A stretch of DNA of 64,000 bases from Vitrella brassicaformis CCMP3155. Taxonomy: Eukaryota; Protista; Chromerida. Made by a program: the position numbers and the translations under genes. This document shows, in pieces, positions 7,810 through 64,000 of this stretch (position 1 is the stretch's first letter; each line of letters opens with the position of its first letter). The stretch covers positions 62,001 through 126,000 of the forward strand of contig CDMY01000309.1 of NCBI GenBank assembly GCA_001179505.1. The letters are read 5' to 3'. Under the pieces are notes generated by a model. It did not search any database. It was given only the letters and a program-made list of their open reading frames with translations, and was not told the DNA's origin.

Positions 7810-9486
7810 ACCTATAGCAATCCCTATGGTCCCGGAATGACAGCCCCGCCACCGTATAGCCCGTCCTCACAATGATGGCGTTTGTGGGGACGGGCGTGGT
7901 GGCAGGGTTGGTGCCGCAAACTCCATCCTGTTGGCTATTCGGAAGCCATCTGAGGGCGGCATGGCGCCTCAGTACTCCTGCCGGCGGCTCCGGACCGGCG
8001 GATGTTTTTTTTTCTTTTGTGAGGGGGAGGGGCGGGGGGGACGGAGCGGGCGCAGACTCGTCAAATCAGGCGGAGATTAGCTGATTCTGACGATGCCGGC
8101 GAATGCGGCGCGCGATCCACTCGACCTGATCACGCAAACACGGCGATTGGGCAGCCGGACACCGCAATTGGGCCACCGTATAGCCCGTCCTCACAGCGAT
8201 GAAACGCTTCTCTGGTGGCAAAGGTGGTTCTCTCAGTCAGGACGTGTCAGTGGGAGGGAAATCCACTCATCAGAATATAAAATGTAGGCAGCAATCGACA
8301 TGTCTACATCGACAAGGACAACAGGGAGACATAACATAGCGAGAACCTTTTCTAGAATTCGGCTGTCGTTACTGTTCTTTTGCCTCGAAATCTGCCTGCA
8401 TCTGCCGGAACTTGAGATGTCATAATGTGCCGCACCTGCTCCCGTGAGCGTCCCATCGAGCAGCTCTCTTCGAAGAGCGAGCTCTTGTTATGGAGAATGC
8501 GGTGCGCGCAGTCGATCTGTACACACATATATACACATCGATCCCACCCCATTAAAATGTTCAATCAATAGATAGGTGTCGCGTCGTGTTGCACTTGCCC
8601 GGAAGTAGAGTCTCCCCTGCGAAGGCTCAGCATGGATGTGATAAGCATGACGACCAATGGACTGAAGCTGCACATGACATACACCAGCCAATTTTGTGTC
8701 AGAGAGGGGGAGTGCCTACATTGCACTGCTTACGTCTAGCTGACATGGCACGGCACACACCGCACGCATTCCATGTGCACTTACTTCGGCTCAGTGATTG
8801 TTTTCGTTTTCGTGTGAACGTGATCGTTTGCTGCTGCGGGCTGGTCCTTTCCTCAGGCAGTGGTGAGACGGCAACGGTGATGGGCGCGTCGATCGACGGA
8901 TTGCTCTCCTTGCTTCTGCTTGCACCTTCGATCAGGACACTTTGCGCTTCTTGCTCCGCGTGTGGTACCGATGCGTCGGCTCAGCAGCAGCAGGCAGGGT
9001 GGTCTGCTGGCCGGTGGGGATGTGGGGCGCCGCACACACCACGGCAACAACAATAAGGCATCCGTATAGCCATCTGTCCATGTGTGTGTGGTGTGGCGTA
9101 CCGTGTTTTGGCTCGCCCGCCACATCCTTCACGTCGAAGGCGTTGCTGTTGGCCTTGCGCGTGGTCGTCACGGCCGCACCGGCCCCCGCAGCTGCGTTGC
9201 ACACATCACACACACACACAGACACACGTGAGAGAGAGGCGCAAGCACCGTGTGTCTGTTGTGTGTGTGGCGGCTGACCCTTTGAGGCGTCGGCATCGAT
9301 CTCCTCATCCTCCGCATCCGCCGTGAGCTTCAACCCCCCCACACGCTCCCCGGGCGGCAGGAATTGCCACTTAGGGGTCGCCCGGTGCTCGAGCTTCACA
9401 CCAGACACATTCTGGCCAGGACCCGTGTGGCCACAAGTGGTTGTTGCTGCTTCCAATCCTGGAAGGACTGTTCGCCCCGCCGCTCC
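7810..9486. repeat. Diverged segmental duplication, copy A (partner 9787-10975)
   Basis: 7821-8150 matches 9800-10150 and 8750-9486 matches 10215-10975, with substitutions and indels. About 600 bp (8150-8750) is unique to copy A. Confidence 0.9.
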
Positions 9487-51764: not shown

Positions 51765-57897
<6,133 letters not shown>

Positions 57898-58008
57898 CAC
57901 GGATGAATGGACCAACCAGATTCGCTACGCGTTCAGACGGGCGGGGAGAGAGGGCCGGGGCGATCGGGGGGCACATCAGGCGCGGCCGCCAGCCCCCCGT
58001 CAGTCGTC

Positions 58009-61000
58009 ATGTCGACGCCATCCACCATCACAGTTCGCCCTCCCGATGTCCGAGGGACTGCTCAACAGTTCAGTGCCGTCCAAGGATCATTCGAGCCGCC
58101 AGGTCAGCTCTTTATCATGCTTTCCGGAAGTGGATCTTGTTTGCCTCATTGCTCGTTGTTTGCTTCGACCAGATGTGCCTGCATCTACCTCAGGTGGGGC
58201 GCACGATTCATGTGAGGCCACATCGGACTCAGCCTCTTTCTCTCACTCTCTCCCCCTCAGGTGCACACACACCCGTCACTCCCAACTTCTTCGAGCAGCC
58301 CGACGCAGAGGTCATTTCGAGAGCCATCGCCACGAGGTCACTACCGGTACTCAACCACGAGCAGCTGCATGACTCTCCCTTTGTTCGCAGGGTATCCTTC
58401 AACCGTCATGGGTTCGTCCATCAGAATGCCGGCAGCGTTTTTCATTACTATGATATCGACAAGGATGCGAAGCTGGGGTGATGGAACATACAGTTCACAG
58501 CATGAGACATGGCCATCCTTCTTTTTGTGTGTGGCAGATCGGGATCGTTTGGTGAGGTCTACATTGCTCGGTCTCGCTTCTCTGATGACCGGATAGCGAT
58601 GAAGAAGATACCGCGGTCGATTGTCACCAATTTGGACAGATTCAACAAGGAAATGAGGATACTCAAAGTGAGCACGAGATCCATCGCGCTGCCGTGAGGA
58701 AGGACCTGTCTGCGCCATGTCTCTGCTTCTTTCCAGGAGCTGGATCATCCCCACATCATTCGTCTGTTTGAGATCTTTTATGATGCGAGACACGTACGTA
58801 AGAATGATGTATGTCTCTGCATGTCTTTGTGTTTGGTCTCATTCGCACTCTGGTCTCTCCCACCGGCTGATTCGTCGCTTCTTTGCAGTATTATCTGTGT
58901 CAGGAGCTGTGTGAGGGCGGAGAGCTCCACTCATGGCTGCACAAAAGTAAGACAAAAAAGCCGAGTCCCATTCAGTCGACACCTAATTCATCGATGGTGC
59001 AGGTGGCGGGTGTGTGAGTGAGGCCCAGTGGGGCCGGTTGCTGCCTCAATTCCTCTCAGCGATCACATACATGCACACAAAAGGTCAGCACCATTCATCA
59101 AAGGCACATGGCCTGACGCCACTCCGCAACAGGGATTTGTCATCGGGATCTCAAGTTCGACAATGTGCTGTTCGTGGCACCTGAACAAGACAATTTCATC
59201 ATCAAAGTCAGTATTGGTCGCATAGAGATCACGAGACGCGTAGGAGAATAATCCCCTGTCTTCTTCAGCTGGTGGATTTCGGTTTTGCCAGTGAGTCTGT
59301 CGACCGGGATGAGGGAAGGAAACTGTCAGCCAAGAGCCGAGACCCGAGCATGCTCCAACTGGTACGCACACATGTAGCTCTCCCAAGCCCACTCGCTTTT
59401 CCGTTCGCTCGCTTGTCTTCGTTGTTGGGCATGCTAGATCACTCCGCTTACAAGCGGACCTGTGAGTCGCTATGCTGCCAAGCCCGATACACTGCCTCTA
59501 CCCCTCAACTTCTACGCAAAGACGTCGGCGCAGCAGCATCAAGACGACACAACAGGCAATCTGAAGAGACTCATGCAAAGGTAAAGCGAGAGCGCCGCAC
59601 AATCGATCGGCACTCGTTTGTGTGGGTCTGTCCAGTCGTGGTCGCGCCGTGACATTCGGCGAGGGGATTGAGTCGGAGCAGGATGAGGCGGACGCTAAGG
59701 AACAGGAGCAGGGTGGGCGGACTATAATGAACACAAGAGCAGAGTCATGGCTAGACAAAATGATGCACTGGCACTTATACAGAGGAGTACTTCGGTCGCT
59801 CCCAGCGCTTCCGTGCGTCGTTGCGCAGCCAGGCGCCCATCACGGGTGGAACATACACGGACATCGAACATCCGGCTCACAGCTGCGCCGCCCCCGAGTA
59901 CCAATTCACGATACAATTCACCGATCGCTGCGACATGTGGAGCCTCGTGAGCCGGCCAAGAAGCAAATGACTACAAGCGGAATGTAGGGGTGTGTGTTTG
60001 CAGGGAGTAATGACGTATGTCGCTCTCAGCGGTCACTATCCATGGGGAAAGGACTTTGATCAGTCGGAGGTCTCCAGGTAAATGAGTGAATGAGTGAGTG
60101 TGTGTGCGTGTCTGCTCATTGTCTCTGCTTTCAGTACGAAGATTCATTGGGATGACTTCCAGCTGACATTCGATGACGACAAGTGGAGCAAGGTGTCCAA
60201 GGAGGCCAAAGACTTCATTCGAGTACATAGAAAGGCACAACACGACAAGAATTGCGCTTTGCTGGTTGCGGGTACGGTACCCAATTGCCTCAGCGCCTCG
60301 TGCAAGTGGATCCCTCACAGCGTCTGTCTGCCCGCGACGCCCTGGACCACCCATACGTGAAGAAATACAAACCAAAACATGACATCAATGCGTATGTGAT
60401 GCAGCCAACAAGAAATTGCTACTACTGTATGCCTGTCTCTTCAGCTTGACCGATGAGATCGTTGCCAGCATCCTGGAATGGCCCTTTCACTCGCAGCTCA
60501 AGAAGGCGGCACTCACCGCCGCAGCCTGCTTCTTAAAGGAGCAAAAGCTGGAGGTGCCAGGAACAGCTTGGCGCCTGTCTGTCTCACAGCAGTGCCTTTC
60601 CTCTGCACCTGTTTATCTCTTGAGTGCAGAAACTCCGTTTGGCATTTCAATCAATCGATCTGGACAACGATGGCTTCATCGAGTTCAAGGAGTTCGAAAA
60701 AGTCAGGCAATAAATCACCAAAACGAAAGCGTCACGTCGATCCATGCCAGCTCGCTTTCAGGTTTTCCGCAAGCGTCTCGACGCCCTGCTGGCTCTTCCT
60801 TCTCGCAAAGGCACCCTCGGAAACCACCTGGAGATATTCGCCGAGGACGTGCAGCAGAACAGCGAGGAGATGAAGGTGAGGCCACACAAACGCCTTCTTA
60901 CTCGTGTATCAGTTCTGATTCCCAATCAGGTGATTTTCCACAGCATTGACACGAATGTGGCGTCGCACATCGAGTTTAAGGTCATCATGACCGAGACACA

Positions 61001-64000
61001 GTGCAATGTTTTCTCGTTAGCGTGCTGCTGCTGTCTTCCAGGAGTTTTCGGCCGCTGCAATGGGCAGCGACCTGGCCACCAATGTCGAGCTGTGCAAGGC
61101 TGCTTTCAGGTGCTTCGACCAGGTAAGGAAGAAGGCGGCGGTGGCGACACGGAAAAGGCGTGTGTCTTTTGTCTCTGACAAGGATGGCGACGGTGTGGTC
61201 AGCCTCGAAGAGCTGAAAGAAGTCACAGAGGGACCAAGACGGTACAACTCCCTTCACCCACGAAACCCGCTCACATTCGTCTTGTGTCTCATCTAATTCC
61301 AGCCGCATTCGCATCAACGCATCCTCCTCACCGTCCAGCCCGCACCACGAGCCGAGCTCACCAGCAGCAAAAAATGTCATGTCACCCCTCAGCAGAACTA
61401 GAAGCTTCATGTCTGCCCCGGGGTCGCCTGAGGCGGAACAACAGCTCCCCTCGTTCCCACCAATGCATCGCGAAAAGCTTAATTTCATGCCTGCGGGACT
61501 GCGGTCGATCCAGAGACACATTGGACCGACCCTGCACGCGGAGACACTCGTCAAAATCGTGAGACCCGGGCAGGCATAGGTGGATTGCTGGTTGGTATTT
61601 TGTGTGGCTGTGCGTGTGCACGCGTACGTGAATGCAGGCTTTGGGAGATGATGATGACGAGCTTGAGTATGAGGATTTTGTCAATCTGATATCGGAGAAG
61701 GTCATGCTGCGGTGTTACTATGAGGTGGGGCACGGACGGGCCTCGTACCTCTTTGCACACGAAGGTAAGCAAACAAATCGCACGAGCCGGCTGCATAGCC
61801 TCTATTACACTGTCAGGCAACGCTTATGTTTTAGACCCCGAATGGAACATCTGGCAATACGTCAGAGACCTTCAGGTCAGGCACACTAAGCGAGATGGGG
61901 CAATGAGCCTTCCACAGGAGATAAGCCTTATACGATCTCACTGGTTCTCTTCTCACGTTAGCATTTCAACCTGTCCCTGAAGGGCATTCTGCTGACACAC
62001 ATGCCCCTCGACAGTCTATCAGGTGCGTGAGTGATTCGGCAGCAACCCTTCCTGTGTGAATGACTATCCTCGTCCCTCTATTCAGGGCACTACGAGTTGA
62101 GCCACGTGACGGGCTGTCCAGTGTATTTCAGCAGAGAGGAGGAACTCCTCCAGGGAACGGCGCCACCAAAAAGGGAGACTTGTGTCTCAAACAATGCCAT
62201 ATACAAGTGAGCAGCAGACGATACACGACAGGTCTCTGTTCAATGCAGGTGTCCCCTTCTTTCAGGATATCTAGTCGGTTTGTGTGGCGGGTTCTCGAGA
62301 CGCCCGGCCACACACCGGGGGCACTCACGTGGCTGCTTTGCAGGAACAAGGGGAAGGAGGTAAGCAGAGGGGAGGAGGCATCACTTCTGTCATTCGTGTG
62401 CCTGTGCATGATAGGCCGGCACTCCATTAATCGGCTTCACGGGAGCCACTCTACTCAACGGAGCCGTCGGTCGCACTGACGTCGGCGAATCGCTCCTCAA
62501 CAAGTGGGCTTGAGACACACAGGGAGAAGCGCGGTAATGAACACTGTGCTTCTGCTCTCAGGCCTTCCAGCAAGAAGGGGAAGCGTAGCCTGGTTGAGAG
62601 CCTGTTTGAGTCCCTGCAGCAGCTCGATACTCTCTTGCCCGCGTCAATCGATATTTACCCCGCCTATGGCCCAGGCAGCCCCGTCGCCATACCCGAAAGC
62701 TTCTGCCTTGATCTCAGGACAACGGTGTGTGAGCACACGCACATACAGGTCCCGCGACCAAGCAGCCTCTCGCCTCGCGTGCTCCTTGTGTGTGCTTAGC
62801 TGGCAGAGCAGCGTCAGCAGAATGAGTTCTTCAGGGCAAAGAACAAGGAAGCCTTCACTGAGCTGATGGACAGGCTGCTAAAGCAGGAGATATCTGTCGG
62901 GCGTACACGACTCTGCTGGGATGAGGTGAACGCACAACAGACCACAGGAGAGGAACGGAGAGACACCTGTGGGCGGTGGCTGCTTTTCTCAGGTGGTTCG
63001 CGAGAACAGCATCAAGTGGGATGAGCGCAAGAAGATCCTCCCAGCGCCACCAGCCTCAATCGAGGAGTACCACCCAGCAGTTCTCACACAGCGTTTTGGC
63101 GGCGCCTTGCCCTTCAAGGCTTTTCTCCAAAGGCTGATCAGCCTTGAAAGCAAACATGGCCGGGACTCCCTGATCATCATCGACGGCAGAGACTGCGACA
63201 AATTCGCACAGTAAGGGTTGCTTGTACGTCATCGCGTCGTTTTTTCCACAACAAGTGCCTGTATGTCGATGCCTTACTGGTTTCAGGTGCCATCTGCAAG
63301 GTTCTTTGAATGTCCCTGTGCACACCTCAAGTCCGGTCGAGGACTTTTGGGGCATCTGGATCGTCTCCATGATCAAGACCCTCAACGCGCCGCCGCCCAC
63401 ACGGGACAGCAGCTCCCAGAAGGCACCCAAATCGGGCACGTCGTCTGCTCGCGGCAGTTCGACGCCATCTCCATCGCTGAGCAAGACGCCTTTTCCGTCT
63501 GTGAGCAACACGTCACTACCAAGTGATGGGGCGGGGGCCACGCGAGACAAGGAAAAGCTGTTGGTGGTCGCGCCGTCAGAGCAACTAGAGGAAATGCTCA
63601 TGTGAGAAGACGATGGACAGGGTAGCATCACACCAATGGTGCGAACTCCTTCATGTCCGGCCTTTTGCAGGCGCCTGGCTCAGATGGGATTGGGGGATAG
63701 GATAGTCGCTGCCACGGGATGCGACCTGGAGATCGCCGCGGACAATAAAATGTACCCGCGAAGGTAGCCAAGACGCAGAGGCAAAGCTGTCGATTCACGA
63801 TTCTCACTGCCCTTTGTTTAGTTCGTACGACTTGTTGGAGATTCCAACTGAGTCGACATTTTTCCCGTCAGGCAGCGAAGACGGGGACGATCAGGCGGAC
63901 GGAGGAGGTATGGCACTACGACTTGGGTTGTGGTGGAAGCCTTGTCCACAGGAGTGGCGTGTCTGTGTGGCAGAGGCGCCATGGCTGTACCAGAAGGACA
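58009..64000 (+). CDS. CDPK (kinase plus EF hands) fused to a degenerate MBL-fold/persulfide-dioxygenase-like domain and rhodanese; continues past the window
   Basis: LGSGSFGEVY, IAMKK, HRDLKFDN, DFG, APE, DMWSLG; EF hands DLDNDGFIEFKE and DQDGDGVVSLEE. Then in frame ASYLF..GNAYVLDP, LLTHMPLDSLSG, TPGHT, FTGATLLNGAVGRTD, IYPAYGPGS and IIDGRDCDKFAQCHLQGSLNVP. Every junction I checked is phase-consistent. Confidence 0.85.

What the first reader, a model, noticed from the sequence alone, without database searches (positions are those of the whole stretch)
58009..64000. Calcium-dependent protein kinase fused to an MBL-fold persulfide-dioxygenase-like domain and rhodanese
Seen: the last EF-hand-like segment (ALGDDDDELEYEDFVNLISEK) and the start of an MBL fold (VMLRCYYEVGHGRASYLFAHE) sit in one exon, 61638-61764, with no stop. 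Phase-consistent GT-AG exons follow (61817-61875, 61962-62022, 62086-62206, 62266-62359 and onward), giving NAYVLDP / THMPLDSLSG / TPGHT / FTGA..GRTD / PAYGPGS, then a rhodanese fold (IIDGRD..CHLQGSLNVP). Known: this motif order matches bacterial MBL-rhodanese fusions (CstB/Blh-type persulfide dioxygenase-sulfurtransferases), and canonical CDPKs end after the EF hands. Inference: one polypeptide could couple Ca2+ signalling to sulfur/persulfide or redox sensing. I do not know this architecture from any characterised protein.
Basis: partly seen in the sequence, partly recalled or inferred. Interest (0 to 1): 0.92.

Follow-up and report, generated by a model that had tools for sequence, protein, structure and literature searches.

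The report
Calcium kinase fused to sulfur-enzyme module
In the alga Vitrella brassicaformis one gene joins a calcium-dependent protein kinase to a complete bacterial-type persulfide-detoxifying module whose iron site is broken but whose sulfur-carrying end is intact, a combination found in no other organism searched and a possible link between calcium and sulfur signalling.

Summary
A 5,296-nt spliced contig (run X6) crosses every junction from the kinase into the MBL-rhodanese part, and exon 61638-61764 carries both the EF-hand-4-like segment and the MBL start in one frame. The gene is Vitrella brassicaformis CEM01770.1 (1343 aa), publicly named only "Ser/Thr protein kinase". That model skips an 81-nt kinase exon, so the protein is about 1370 aa.

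The last ~600 residues match bacterial CstB-type proteins (PDO-like MBL, pseudo-rhodanese, catalytic rhodanese) along their full length: 3tp9 E 4e-24, fold TM 0.81. The match starts at the position of the bacterial Met1.

The MBL domain has lost four residues that are 97-100% conserved in 114 relatives: Fe-ligand Asp145 to Ala, His58 to Pro, His196 to Tyr, and the essential Cys201 to Val. Pfam Lactamase_B scores below its cut-off. The C-terminal rhodanese, just beyond the window, keeps Cys408, Arg413 and Arg370.

No other kinase-fused relative was found. The nearest relatives are 25-33% identical bacterial proteins, and the Vitrella branch is about 30 times the median length.

Verdict: a real and seemingly unique fusion, probably a dead dioxygenase with a live sulfur-accepting domain. 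Its function is untested.

Other first-stage notes on this same stretch (s1-231045, s1-231168, s1-218654) had flagged the fusion and the dead MBL site.

The parts
57907..64000 (+). One gene of 36 GT-AG exons inside the window, running off its right end. It is Vitrella brassicaformis CEM01770.1. The corrected protein is about 1370 aa, of which 1279 are encoded in the window.
   Evidence: The offsets and depth bins of spliced contig X6 fit every exon.
57907..58102 (+). Exon 1. The first in-frame ATG is at 57907.
58391..60391 (+). Ser/Thr kinase domain spread over 12 exons, with all catalytic motifs: GSGSFGEVY, AMKK, HRDLKFDN, DFG, APE. A lineage-specific insert of about 113 aa sits between DFG and APE (about 59290-59880).
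   Evidence: Pfam Pkinase E 2.8e-44. Alignment with CDPKs.
59003..59083 (+). An 81-nt exon that the public gene model omits. It encodes the conserved kinase segment before HRD (GGCVSEAQWGRLLPQFLSAITYMHTK).
   Evidence: X6 record offsets (1200 to 1564 needs 363 nt of exon) and a depth bin of 149 nt. Alignment. Gap in P0004.
60445..60553 (+). CDPK junction (autoinhibitory) segment (…FHSQLKKAALTAAACFLKEQKLE).
   Evidence: Aligned with the junction region of canonical CDPKs.
60630..61241 (+). Calmodulin-like domain. EF1 (DLDNDGFIEFKE) is canonical, EF2 (DTNVASHIEFKE) is degenerate, and EF3 (DQDGDGVVSLEE) is canonical.
   Evidence: Pfam EF-hand_7, EF-hand_1, EF-hand_5 and EF-hand_6..
61303..61558 (+). 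A Ser/Pro-rich insert of 85 aa between EF3 and the EF4-like segment. Other CDPKs lack it. It holds a basophilic site, LSRTRS.
61638..61764 (+). The fusion exon. The EF4-like helix-loop-helix (61638-61700) lacks loop positions 1 and 12. It runs straight into the MBL domain (from 61701, VMLRCYY), which aligns with residues 1-7 of the bacterial proteins.
   Evidence: Joint 61558>61638, and the whole exon lies in one X6 contig. L001 also covers it. Alignments.
61701..62925 (+). CstB-type PDO-like MBL domain in 8 exons. Kept: His56 (61998), His119 (62309), Arg154 (62472). Lost: His58 to Pro (62004), Asp145 to Ala (62445), His196 to Tyr (62665), Cys201 to Val (62683).
   Evidence: Residue roles come from PMC12934615.
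62993..63907 (+). Middle pseudo-rhodanese domain (RHD; IIDGRD…CHLQGSLNVP) with a low-complexity insert of about 55 aa.
   Evidence: Aligned with domain 2 of 3tp9 and with the family. Pfam Rhodanese 17 bits, below cut-off. The insert has low pLDDT.
63974..64000 (+). First codons of the C-terminal catalytic rhodanese domain. The rest (…ILDVR…LLCKCGFRSS…, 86 more residues, then the stop) lies beyond the window.
   Evidence: P0001, P0004 and L001. Pfam Rhodanese E 5e-6, 27.3 bits. Cys408, Arg413 and Arg370 equivalents kept.

Best explanation
One mRNA encodes one polypeptide of about 1370 aa. Its parts, in order, are: a catalytically competent CDPK (kinase, junction segment, calmodulin-like domain with two canonical and two degenerate EF hands), then, with no linker and starting at the position of the ancestral bacterial Met1, a complete CstB-type module (PDO-like MBL domain, pseudo-rhodanese, catalytic rhodanese).

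The module belongs to a bacterial-type family. It has been in the eukaryotic genome long enough to gain 12 introns and host-like codon composition, and it has diverged extremely.

What is shown: the fusion, the homology, the loss of one Fe(II) ligand (Asp145 to Ala) and of the essential Cys201-Gly202 loop, His58 and His196, and the selective retention of the rhodanese catalytic Cys and its two-arginine wall.

What is inferred: the MBL domain no longer oxidises persulfides and serves as a structural or oligomerising pseudo-enzyme, since CstB forms dimers and tetramers through these domains. The terminal rhodanese still accepts sulfane sulfur on its Cys. The kinase, switched on by Ca2+ in the usual CDPK way, is thereby tethered to a persulfide-accepting or persulfide-sensing domain, which either modulates the kinase or positions it at sites of sulfur trafficking.
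For: Fusion:
- The spliced 5,296-nt X6 contig runs from the kinase exons through all MBL and RHD exons with explicit joints.
- A second spliced assembly, L001, covers 59183 to the stop.
- The public gene model has the same architecture.
- Contig depths are similar over both halves in runs X1 and X7.
- The EF4-to-MBL boundary lies inside one exon with no stop.

Homology:
- 3tp9 E 4.2e-24 with all three domains aligned, and 3r2u E 1.2e-18.
- AF2 model pTM 0.73; Foldseek 3tp9 E 2e-32, TM 0.81 by target.
- At least 582 bacterial loci encode relatives.

Dead PDO site:
- In 114 relatives His58 is His in 113, Asp145 is Asp in 111, His196 is His in 113 and Cys201 is Cys in 114. Vitrella has Pro, Ala, Tyr and Val.
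- In CstB, H56/H119/D145 are the Fe ligands, and the C201A and C408A variants are inactive (PMC12934615).

Live rhodanese:
- 15 of 17 columns that are at least 90% conserved are kept in the Rhod domain, against 61% in PDO and 53% in RHD.
- The Cys408, Arg413 and Arg370 equivalents are kept.
- The loop CKCGFR has the six-residue sulfurtransferase length.

Long residence in the genome:
- GC3 is 0.69 against 0.65, and intron density is 7.9 against 9.9 per kb in the two halves.
Against: - No protein-level evidence exists for the full-length product.
- Only one contig (X6) crosses the EF4/MBL boundary without a gap. L001 has a 10-N scaffold gap there, and the X1 and X7 contigs break nearby.
- An in-frame Met sits exactly at the ancestral start (…EKVMLR…), so separate translation of the module is conceivable.
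- 3 of 114 bacterial relatives also lack Asp145 (they have Gly), so that ligand is not absolutely required for family membership.
- Nothing here measures sulfur transfer, metal binding, oligomerisation or any effect on the kinase.
- With no orthologue available, purifying selection on the module cannot be tested.
Confidence: 0.6

Rival explanations
1. There are two products rather than one. The CDPK and the MBL-rhodanese module are expressed separately, through an internal promoter, alternative processing or internal initiation at the Met of …EKVMLR…, and the single contig merely joins overlapping transcripts.
For: The same X6 contig also runs about 690 nt upstream of the start codon into the neighbouring divergent gene, so it can merge transcripts. 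Several assemblies break near 61680-61830. A Met aligns with the bacterial Met1.
Against: The boundary is in the middle of an exon, with no stop, no UTR space and no splice alternative. The upstream joint 61558>61638 and the downstream joint 61764>61817 lie in the same contig. Paired-end scaffolding joins the two sides in L001. No loose ends, poly(A) or leader sequences were seen at the boundary. Depth is similar on both sides.
Confidence: 0.1
2. The MBL domain is still an enzyme. It uses a 2-His or otherwise rearranged metal site, either as a weakened persulfide dioxygenase or with a new hydrolytic chemistry, so the protein is a Ca2+-regulated kinase joined to an active sulfur-oxidising enzyme.
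For: His56, His119, Asp60, Arg154 and Asp156 are kept. The MBL core is modelled with high confidence. Three bacterial relatives naturally have Gly at the Asp145 position.
Against: Four near-invariant active-site residues are lost together, including Cys201, which is 114/114 conserved and whose substitution inactivates CstB. 26 of 66 highly conserved PDO columns have changed. Pfam Lactamase_B scores below its threshold.
Confidence: 0.15
3. The C-terminal 600 residues are a functionless, decaying appendage from a chance fusion, tolerated but not used.
For: The terminal branch is 8.07 substitutions per site against a median of 0.24. The fusion occurs in a single species. Low-complexity inserts are present.
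Against: About 600 codons over 14 or more exons remain open and correctly spliced. The fold is still predicted as CstB-like. The rhodanese catalytic residues and 88% of its conserved columns are kept, which is non-random compared with the PDO site.
Confidence: 0.15

Closest known systems
CstB of Staphylococcus aureus (PDB 3r2u) and the Alicyclobacillus acidocaldarius MBL-rhodanese protein (PDB 3tp9): bacterial PDO-RHD-Rhod persulfide dioxygenase-sulfurtransferases
   Same: The three domains come in the same order and align over the full length from residue 1. The fold matches at TM 0.81. His56, His119, Arg154, the catalytic Rhod Cys408 and Arg370/Arg413 are kept.
   Different: The module is fused behind a eukaryotic kinase and is interrupted by 12 or more spliceosomal introns. 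It is only 25-33% identical to any relative. It lacks Asp145, His58, His196 and the Cys201-Gly202 loop that CstB needs for turnover. It carries a 55-aa insert in the RHD.
Canonical calcium-dependent protein kinases (CDPKs) of alveolates and plants, for example Chromera velia P0136 (538 aa)
   Same: The kinase motifs, the junction segment and the four-EF-hand calmodulin-like layout align throughout. Pfam finds Pkinase plus EF-hand families.
   Different: Identity to any other CDPK is only about 31%. There are three large inserts: about 113 aa in the activation loop, about 23 aa between EF1 and EF2, and about 75-85 aa before EF4. EF2 and EF4 are degenerate. The protein continues for 600 residues where CDPKs stop.
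ETHE1 / type I persulfide dioxygenases and the BpPRF PDO-rhodanese fusion (PDB 4chl, 5ve3)
   Same: Same MBL fold, and a GRTD-like motif.
   Different: These are more distant than the CstB type (E 0.28 for 4chl). They have a single rhodanese or none. Their glutathione-binding features were not examined here.
Bacterial sulfite-oxidase-like + MBL + rhodanese fusions (P0005, P0006)
   Same: These were the only other long proteins (852-862 aa) found to carry a related MBL-rhodanese module.
   Different: Their fusion partner is a molybdopterin oxidoreductase rather than a kinase, and they are prokaryotic.

Membership tests
CDPK (calcium-dependent protein kinase) | Ser/Thr kinase domain with intact catalytic motifs | tested here: met
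   Pfam Pkinase E 2.8e-44. G-loop, Lys, HRDLK..N, DFG and APE are visible in the alignment. This holds only once the exon 59003-59083 skipped by the public model is restored.
CDPK (calcium-dependent protein kinase) | Junction/autoinhibitory segment followed by a calmodulin-like domain with four EF hands | tested here: inconclusive
   The junction and all four helix-loop-helix units align with CDPKs. Pfam detects EF1-EF2 and EF3. EF2 and EF4 lack canonical loop ligands, and EF4 is separated from EF3 by an 85-aa insert. Ca2+ regulation was not tested.
CDPK (calcium-dependent protein kinase) | Protein ends shortly after EF hand 4 | tested here: not met
   About 600 further residues follow with no linker.
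CstB-type PDO-RHD-Rhod persulfide dioxygenase-sulfurtransferase | MBL, pseudo-rhodanese and rhodanese in this order, homologous over the full length | tested here: met
   3tp9 E 4.2e-24 with three aligned stretches. 35-sequence alignment. Foldseek E 2e-32, TM 0.81.
CstB-type PDO-RHD-Rhod persulfide dioxygenase-sulfurtransferase | His2Asp facial triad for Fe(II) (H56, H119, D145 in CstB) | tested here: not met
   His56 and His119 are kept. Asp145 is Ala, against Asp in 111 of 114 relatives. Ligand identities come from PMC12934615.
CstB-type PDO-RHD-Rhod persulfide dioxygenase-sulfurtransferase | Cys201-Gly202 substrate-mimic loop, required for O2 consumption | tested here: not met
   Val-Ala in Vitrella. 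Cys in 114 of 114 and Gly in 111 of 114 relatives. C201A is inactive.
CstB-type PDO-RHD-Rhod persulfide dioxygenase-sulfurtransferase | Catalytic Cys408 in the C-terminal rhodanese, behind an Arg370/Arg413 wall | tested here: met
   CKCGFRS and DVR are kept. Pfam Rhodanese 27.3 bits against a cut-off of 22.2. This domain lies beyond the window and was read from P0004/L001.
CstB-type PDO-RHD-Rhod persulfide dioxygenase-sulfurtransferase | Persulfide-to-thiosulfate enzymatic activity | not testable with these tools
   Needs the purified protein.
Pfam Lactamase_B (PF00753) | Score at or above the gathering threshold (22.7 bits) | tested here: not met
   12.7 bits, E 0.12. There was no hit at E<=0.1 on the full protein. 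The fold is nevertheless MBL.

The most novel reading that the evidence does not exclude
The protein is a coincidence detector for Ca2+ and reactive sulfur species. Persulfidation of the C-terminal rhodanese Cys, relayed through the catalytically dead CstB-like scaffold, gates or retargets the CDPK. This would be a direct, covalently wired link between calcium signalling and sulfide/persulfide signalling in a photosynthetic relative of apicomplexan parasites.
Probability: 0.15. Interest if true: 0.8.

Novelty: new variant of a known kind. Interest (0 to 1): 0.58.

Why it matters
CDPKs are central calcium effectors in plants and alveolates, and in apicomplexan parasites they are drug targets. 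Their domain layout is regarded as fixed: kinase, junction, four EF hands. This gene shows a CDPK that has captured an entire bacterial-type persulfide-handling module. It then disabled the module's oxygenase site while preserving its sulfur-accepting cysteine. That is the pattern expected when an enzyme is converted into a regulatory or sensing domain.

If the link is functional, it would be a tractable example of crosstalk between Ca2+ and reactive sulfur species, and of a pseudo-enzyme arising after gene fusion.

The work also corrects the public gene model, which skips one kinase exon. It explains why databases list the protein only as a kinase: the MBL domain falls below Pfam's threshold.

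The limits are that the fusion is known from a single species, there is no functional data, and the sequence is already public.

Tried and rejected
1. My first 5' model (58009-58102 joined to 58261-58477) did not fit the X6 depth bins (117 and 92 nt). The public model's mini-exon 58173-58193 plus intron 58337-58390 fits once 6 nt of alignment ambiguity is allowed.

2. The split gene calls on JGI scaffold L001 (553 aa and 542 aa) first looked like a stop between the CDPK and the MBL part. Alignment showed a 10-N scaffold gap with a 4-nt duplicate, which is an assembly artefact.

3. The exhaustive HMMER search with one 72-aa exon found only the protein itself and two repeat-made chance hits.

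4. The search for other long proteins carrying the module found no kinase fusions.

5. The search with the CDPK half found no close orthologue, the best being about 31-39% identical over parts.

6. The phylogeny could not name a donor lineage. The Vitrella branch is too long (8.07) and is roughly equidistant (25-29%) from all relatives.

7. Literature searches for this architecture, or for Vitrella CDPK fusions, found nothing relevant.

9. Spliced multi-exon protein strings could not be submitted to the search tools. The public protein P0004 was used instead, and it lacks the 27 residues of exon 59003-59083.

Full report
**Gene structure and transcript support**

The region is an intron-rich eukaryotic gene on the + strand. 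I rebuilt it from GT-AG sites and the reading frame and checked it against public runs. Four runs hold the stretch. X2, X3 and X4 hold it unspliced in contigs of several kb, so they are genomic.

X6 holds one 5,296-nt contig that skips every predicted intron. The joints 61240>61302, 61558>61638, 61762>61815, 61873>61960, 62018>62082 and 62206>62266 are listed explicitly. A further nine joints from 59360 to 63972 appear. For the joints not listed, the contig's own coordinates add up exactly. One example: 61558 = 2949 and 62562 = 3501, which needs 551 nt, and the exons sum to 127+59+61+121+94+89. Another: 58667 = 1200 and 59438 = 1564, which needs 363 nt, and the exons sum to 57+58+81+74+93.

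A second spliced assembly is JGI scaffold L001 (3,773 nt). It matches exons from 59183 to the stop codon. Its gene caller split it into a 553-aa and a 542-aa product. This happened only because the scaffold has ten Ns and a 4-nt duplicate inside exon 61638-61764. That is an assembly gap, not a stop.

Low-depth runs X1 and X7 give short spliced contigs with similar depth over both halves of the gene. From record lengths I infer that an X7 contig also crosses 61558>61638, but that joint was not printed.

**Identity**

The 542-aa product (P0001) clusters with CEM01770.1 / A0A0G4EU28 of Vitrella brassicaformis CCMP3155. That protein is 1343 aa and is named only 'non-specific serine/threonine protein kinase'. 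The public model has the same fusion.

It differs from the transcript in one place. It skips the 81-nt exon 59003-59083, which the X6 offsets and depth support. That exon restores the conserved kinase segment before HRD. With it the protein is 1370 aa.

At the 5' end the public model fits the X6 depth bins better than my first attempt. It has an ATG at 57907, a mini-exon at 58173-58193 and an intron at 58337-58390.

**The CDPK half**

Pfam finds Pkinase (E 2.8e-44) and several EF-hand families. Aligned with the Chromera, Babesia and other CDPKs, the kinase has all its catalytic motifs. It is followed by a typical junction segment and four helix-loop-helix units.

EF1 and EF3 have canonical loops. 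EF2 and the EF4-like unit do not: EF4 reads L-G-D-D-D-D-E-L-E-Y-E-D, with no Asp at position 1, no Gly at 6 and Asp at 12.

Three inserts are peculiar to this protein: about 113 aa in the activation loop, about 23 aa between EF1 and EF2, and an 85-aa Ser/Pro-rich exon before EF4. No close orthologue exists in the databases. The best CDPK hit is a 538-aa Chromera protein at 31% identity.

**The C-terminal half**

Canonical CDPKs end a few residues after EF4. Here …FVNLISEK is followed at once by VMLRCYYEVGHGRASYLF. This aligns with residues 1-20 of bacterial MBL-rhodanese proteins, with the Met at the position of their initiator.

By phmmer the last 604 residues match 3tp9 (E 4.2e-24, all three domains) and 3r2u, which is CstB of S. 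aureus (E 1.2e-18). An AlphaFold model built with 34 relatives has pTM 0.73, and its low-confidence parts are confined to the inserts. Its best fold match is 3tp9 over the full length (E 2e-32, TM 0.81 by target), followed by CstB, BpPRF and ETHE1.

The predicted second, Cys-bearing rhodanese exists just beyond the window.

**State of the active sites**

According to PMC12934615, CstB binds Fe(II) through H56, H119 and D145. H58 holds the axial water. The C201-G202 loop is the persulfide-carrying substrate mimic. C408 in the rhodanese, behind R370 and R413, completes the reaction. C201A and C408A are both inactive.

I compared these positions across 114 bacterial-type relatives:

| CstB position | Conservation in 114 relatives | Vitrella |
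|---|---|---|
| H56 | 114 | kept |
| H119 | 114 | kept |
| R154 | 114 | kept |
| R370 | 114 | kept |
| C408 | 113 | kept |
| R413 | 113 | kept |
| H58 | 113 | Pro |
| D145 | 111 | Ala |
| H196 | 113 | Tyr |
| C201 | 114 | Val |
| G202 | 111 | Ala |

Of the columns conserved in at least 90% of relatives, Vitrella keeps 61% in the PDO domain and 53% in the middle domain. It keeps 88% in the terminal rhodanese, where the two changes are Tyr to Phe and Trp to Leu. Pfam Lactamase_B scores 12.7 bits against a cut-off of 22.7, which explains why the public name mentions only the kinase.

The pattern is a dioxygenase site taken apart while the sulfur-accepting site is preserved.

**Origin and distribution**

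Relatives are abundant in Actinomycetota, Acidobacteriota, Planctomycetota, Bacteroidota and others. At least 582 loci were found in one scan, and the nearest Atlas clusters are all prokaryotic. None exceeds 33% identity to the Vitrella module.

In a quick maximum-likelihood tree the Vitrella branch is 8.07 substitutions per site against a median of 0.24, so no donor lineage can be named.

The module has 12 introns in the window and a GC3 of 0.69, like the CDPK half (0.65). It is therefore neither contamination nor a recent arrival.

Among proteins of 739-2350 aa, the only others carrying a related module are two bacterial sulfite-oxidase fusions. No second kinase fusion was found. The searches were word-seeded and capped at 8,000 candidates, so absence is not proven. 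Five literature searches found no description of this architecture.

**Interpretation**

Shown:
- one gene, one spliced transcript and one open frame
- a competent-looking CDPK
- a full CstB-type module with a broken Fe site and substrate loop and an intact rhodanese site

Inferred:
- The MBL domain now acts as a structural or oligomerising pseudo-enzyme, since CstB assembles through these domains.
- The rhodanese can still take up sulfane sulfur.
- This either modulates the kinase or places it where sulfur is trafficked.

The rivals are separate expression of the two halves, residual or new catalysis in the MBL domain, and a functionless appendage. Each is less likely but none is excluded. 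The tests are listed under next steps.

**Verdict**

The sequence is already public, while the architecture appears undescribed and is so far confined to one species. I rate it a new variant of known kinds, of moderate to high interest.

Other first-stage notes on this same stretch had also flagged the fusion and the dead MBL site, and I tested both here. Two further notes in this genome, an SQR-persulfide reductase pair and a P450-rhodanese fusion, are unchecked leads.

Noticed in passing
window 57097-57846 (- strand): A pyrophosphate-dependent phosphofructokinase-like gene starts at ATG ~57846 on the minus strand (…[21 protein letters not shown]… further left). That is only about 60 bp from the CDPK gene's first ATG at 57907, so the two genes lie head to head. 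The spliced X6 contig carries about 690 nt upstream of 57907, so the two 5' ends probably overlap.
   Followed up: partly
window 59003-59083: The public gene model CEM01770.1 omits this 81-nt exon. The omission removes 27 residues of the kinase core before HRD.
   Followed up: yes
L001:1595-1610: The JGI transcript scaffold has a 10-N gap plus a 4-nt duplicate inside the fusion exon. This made the gene caller split the ORF into 553-aa and 542-aa products.
   Followed up: yes
P0005, P0006: These are bacterial proteins of 852-862 aa that join a sulfite-oxidase-like molybdopterin domain (PF00174, PF03404) to an MBL-rhodanese module.
   Followed up: no
P0095, P0124: Three of 114 bacterial relatives carry Gly instead of the Fe-ligand Asp145, together with a GAVGRTDL motif like Vitrella's. 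They keep His196 and Cys201.
   Followed up: partly
P0002, P0003: Two weak hits to the 72-aa query are ORFs built from repeated units (FNGAMPFQAWI, MGPCPFRHGY, LQWGHALSGMDT). They look like translated DNA repeats and are unrelated to this gene.
   Followed up: no
window 61303-61558 and 63380-63560: Two Ser/Pro-rich low-complexity inserts are absent from all relatives, one in the calmodulin-like domain and one in the pseudo-rhodanese. The first holds a basophilic kinase-type site (LSRTRS). They could be autophosphorylation targets.
   Followed up: no
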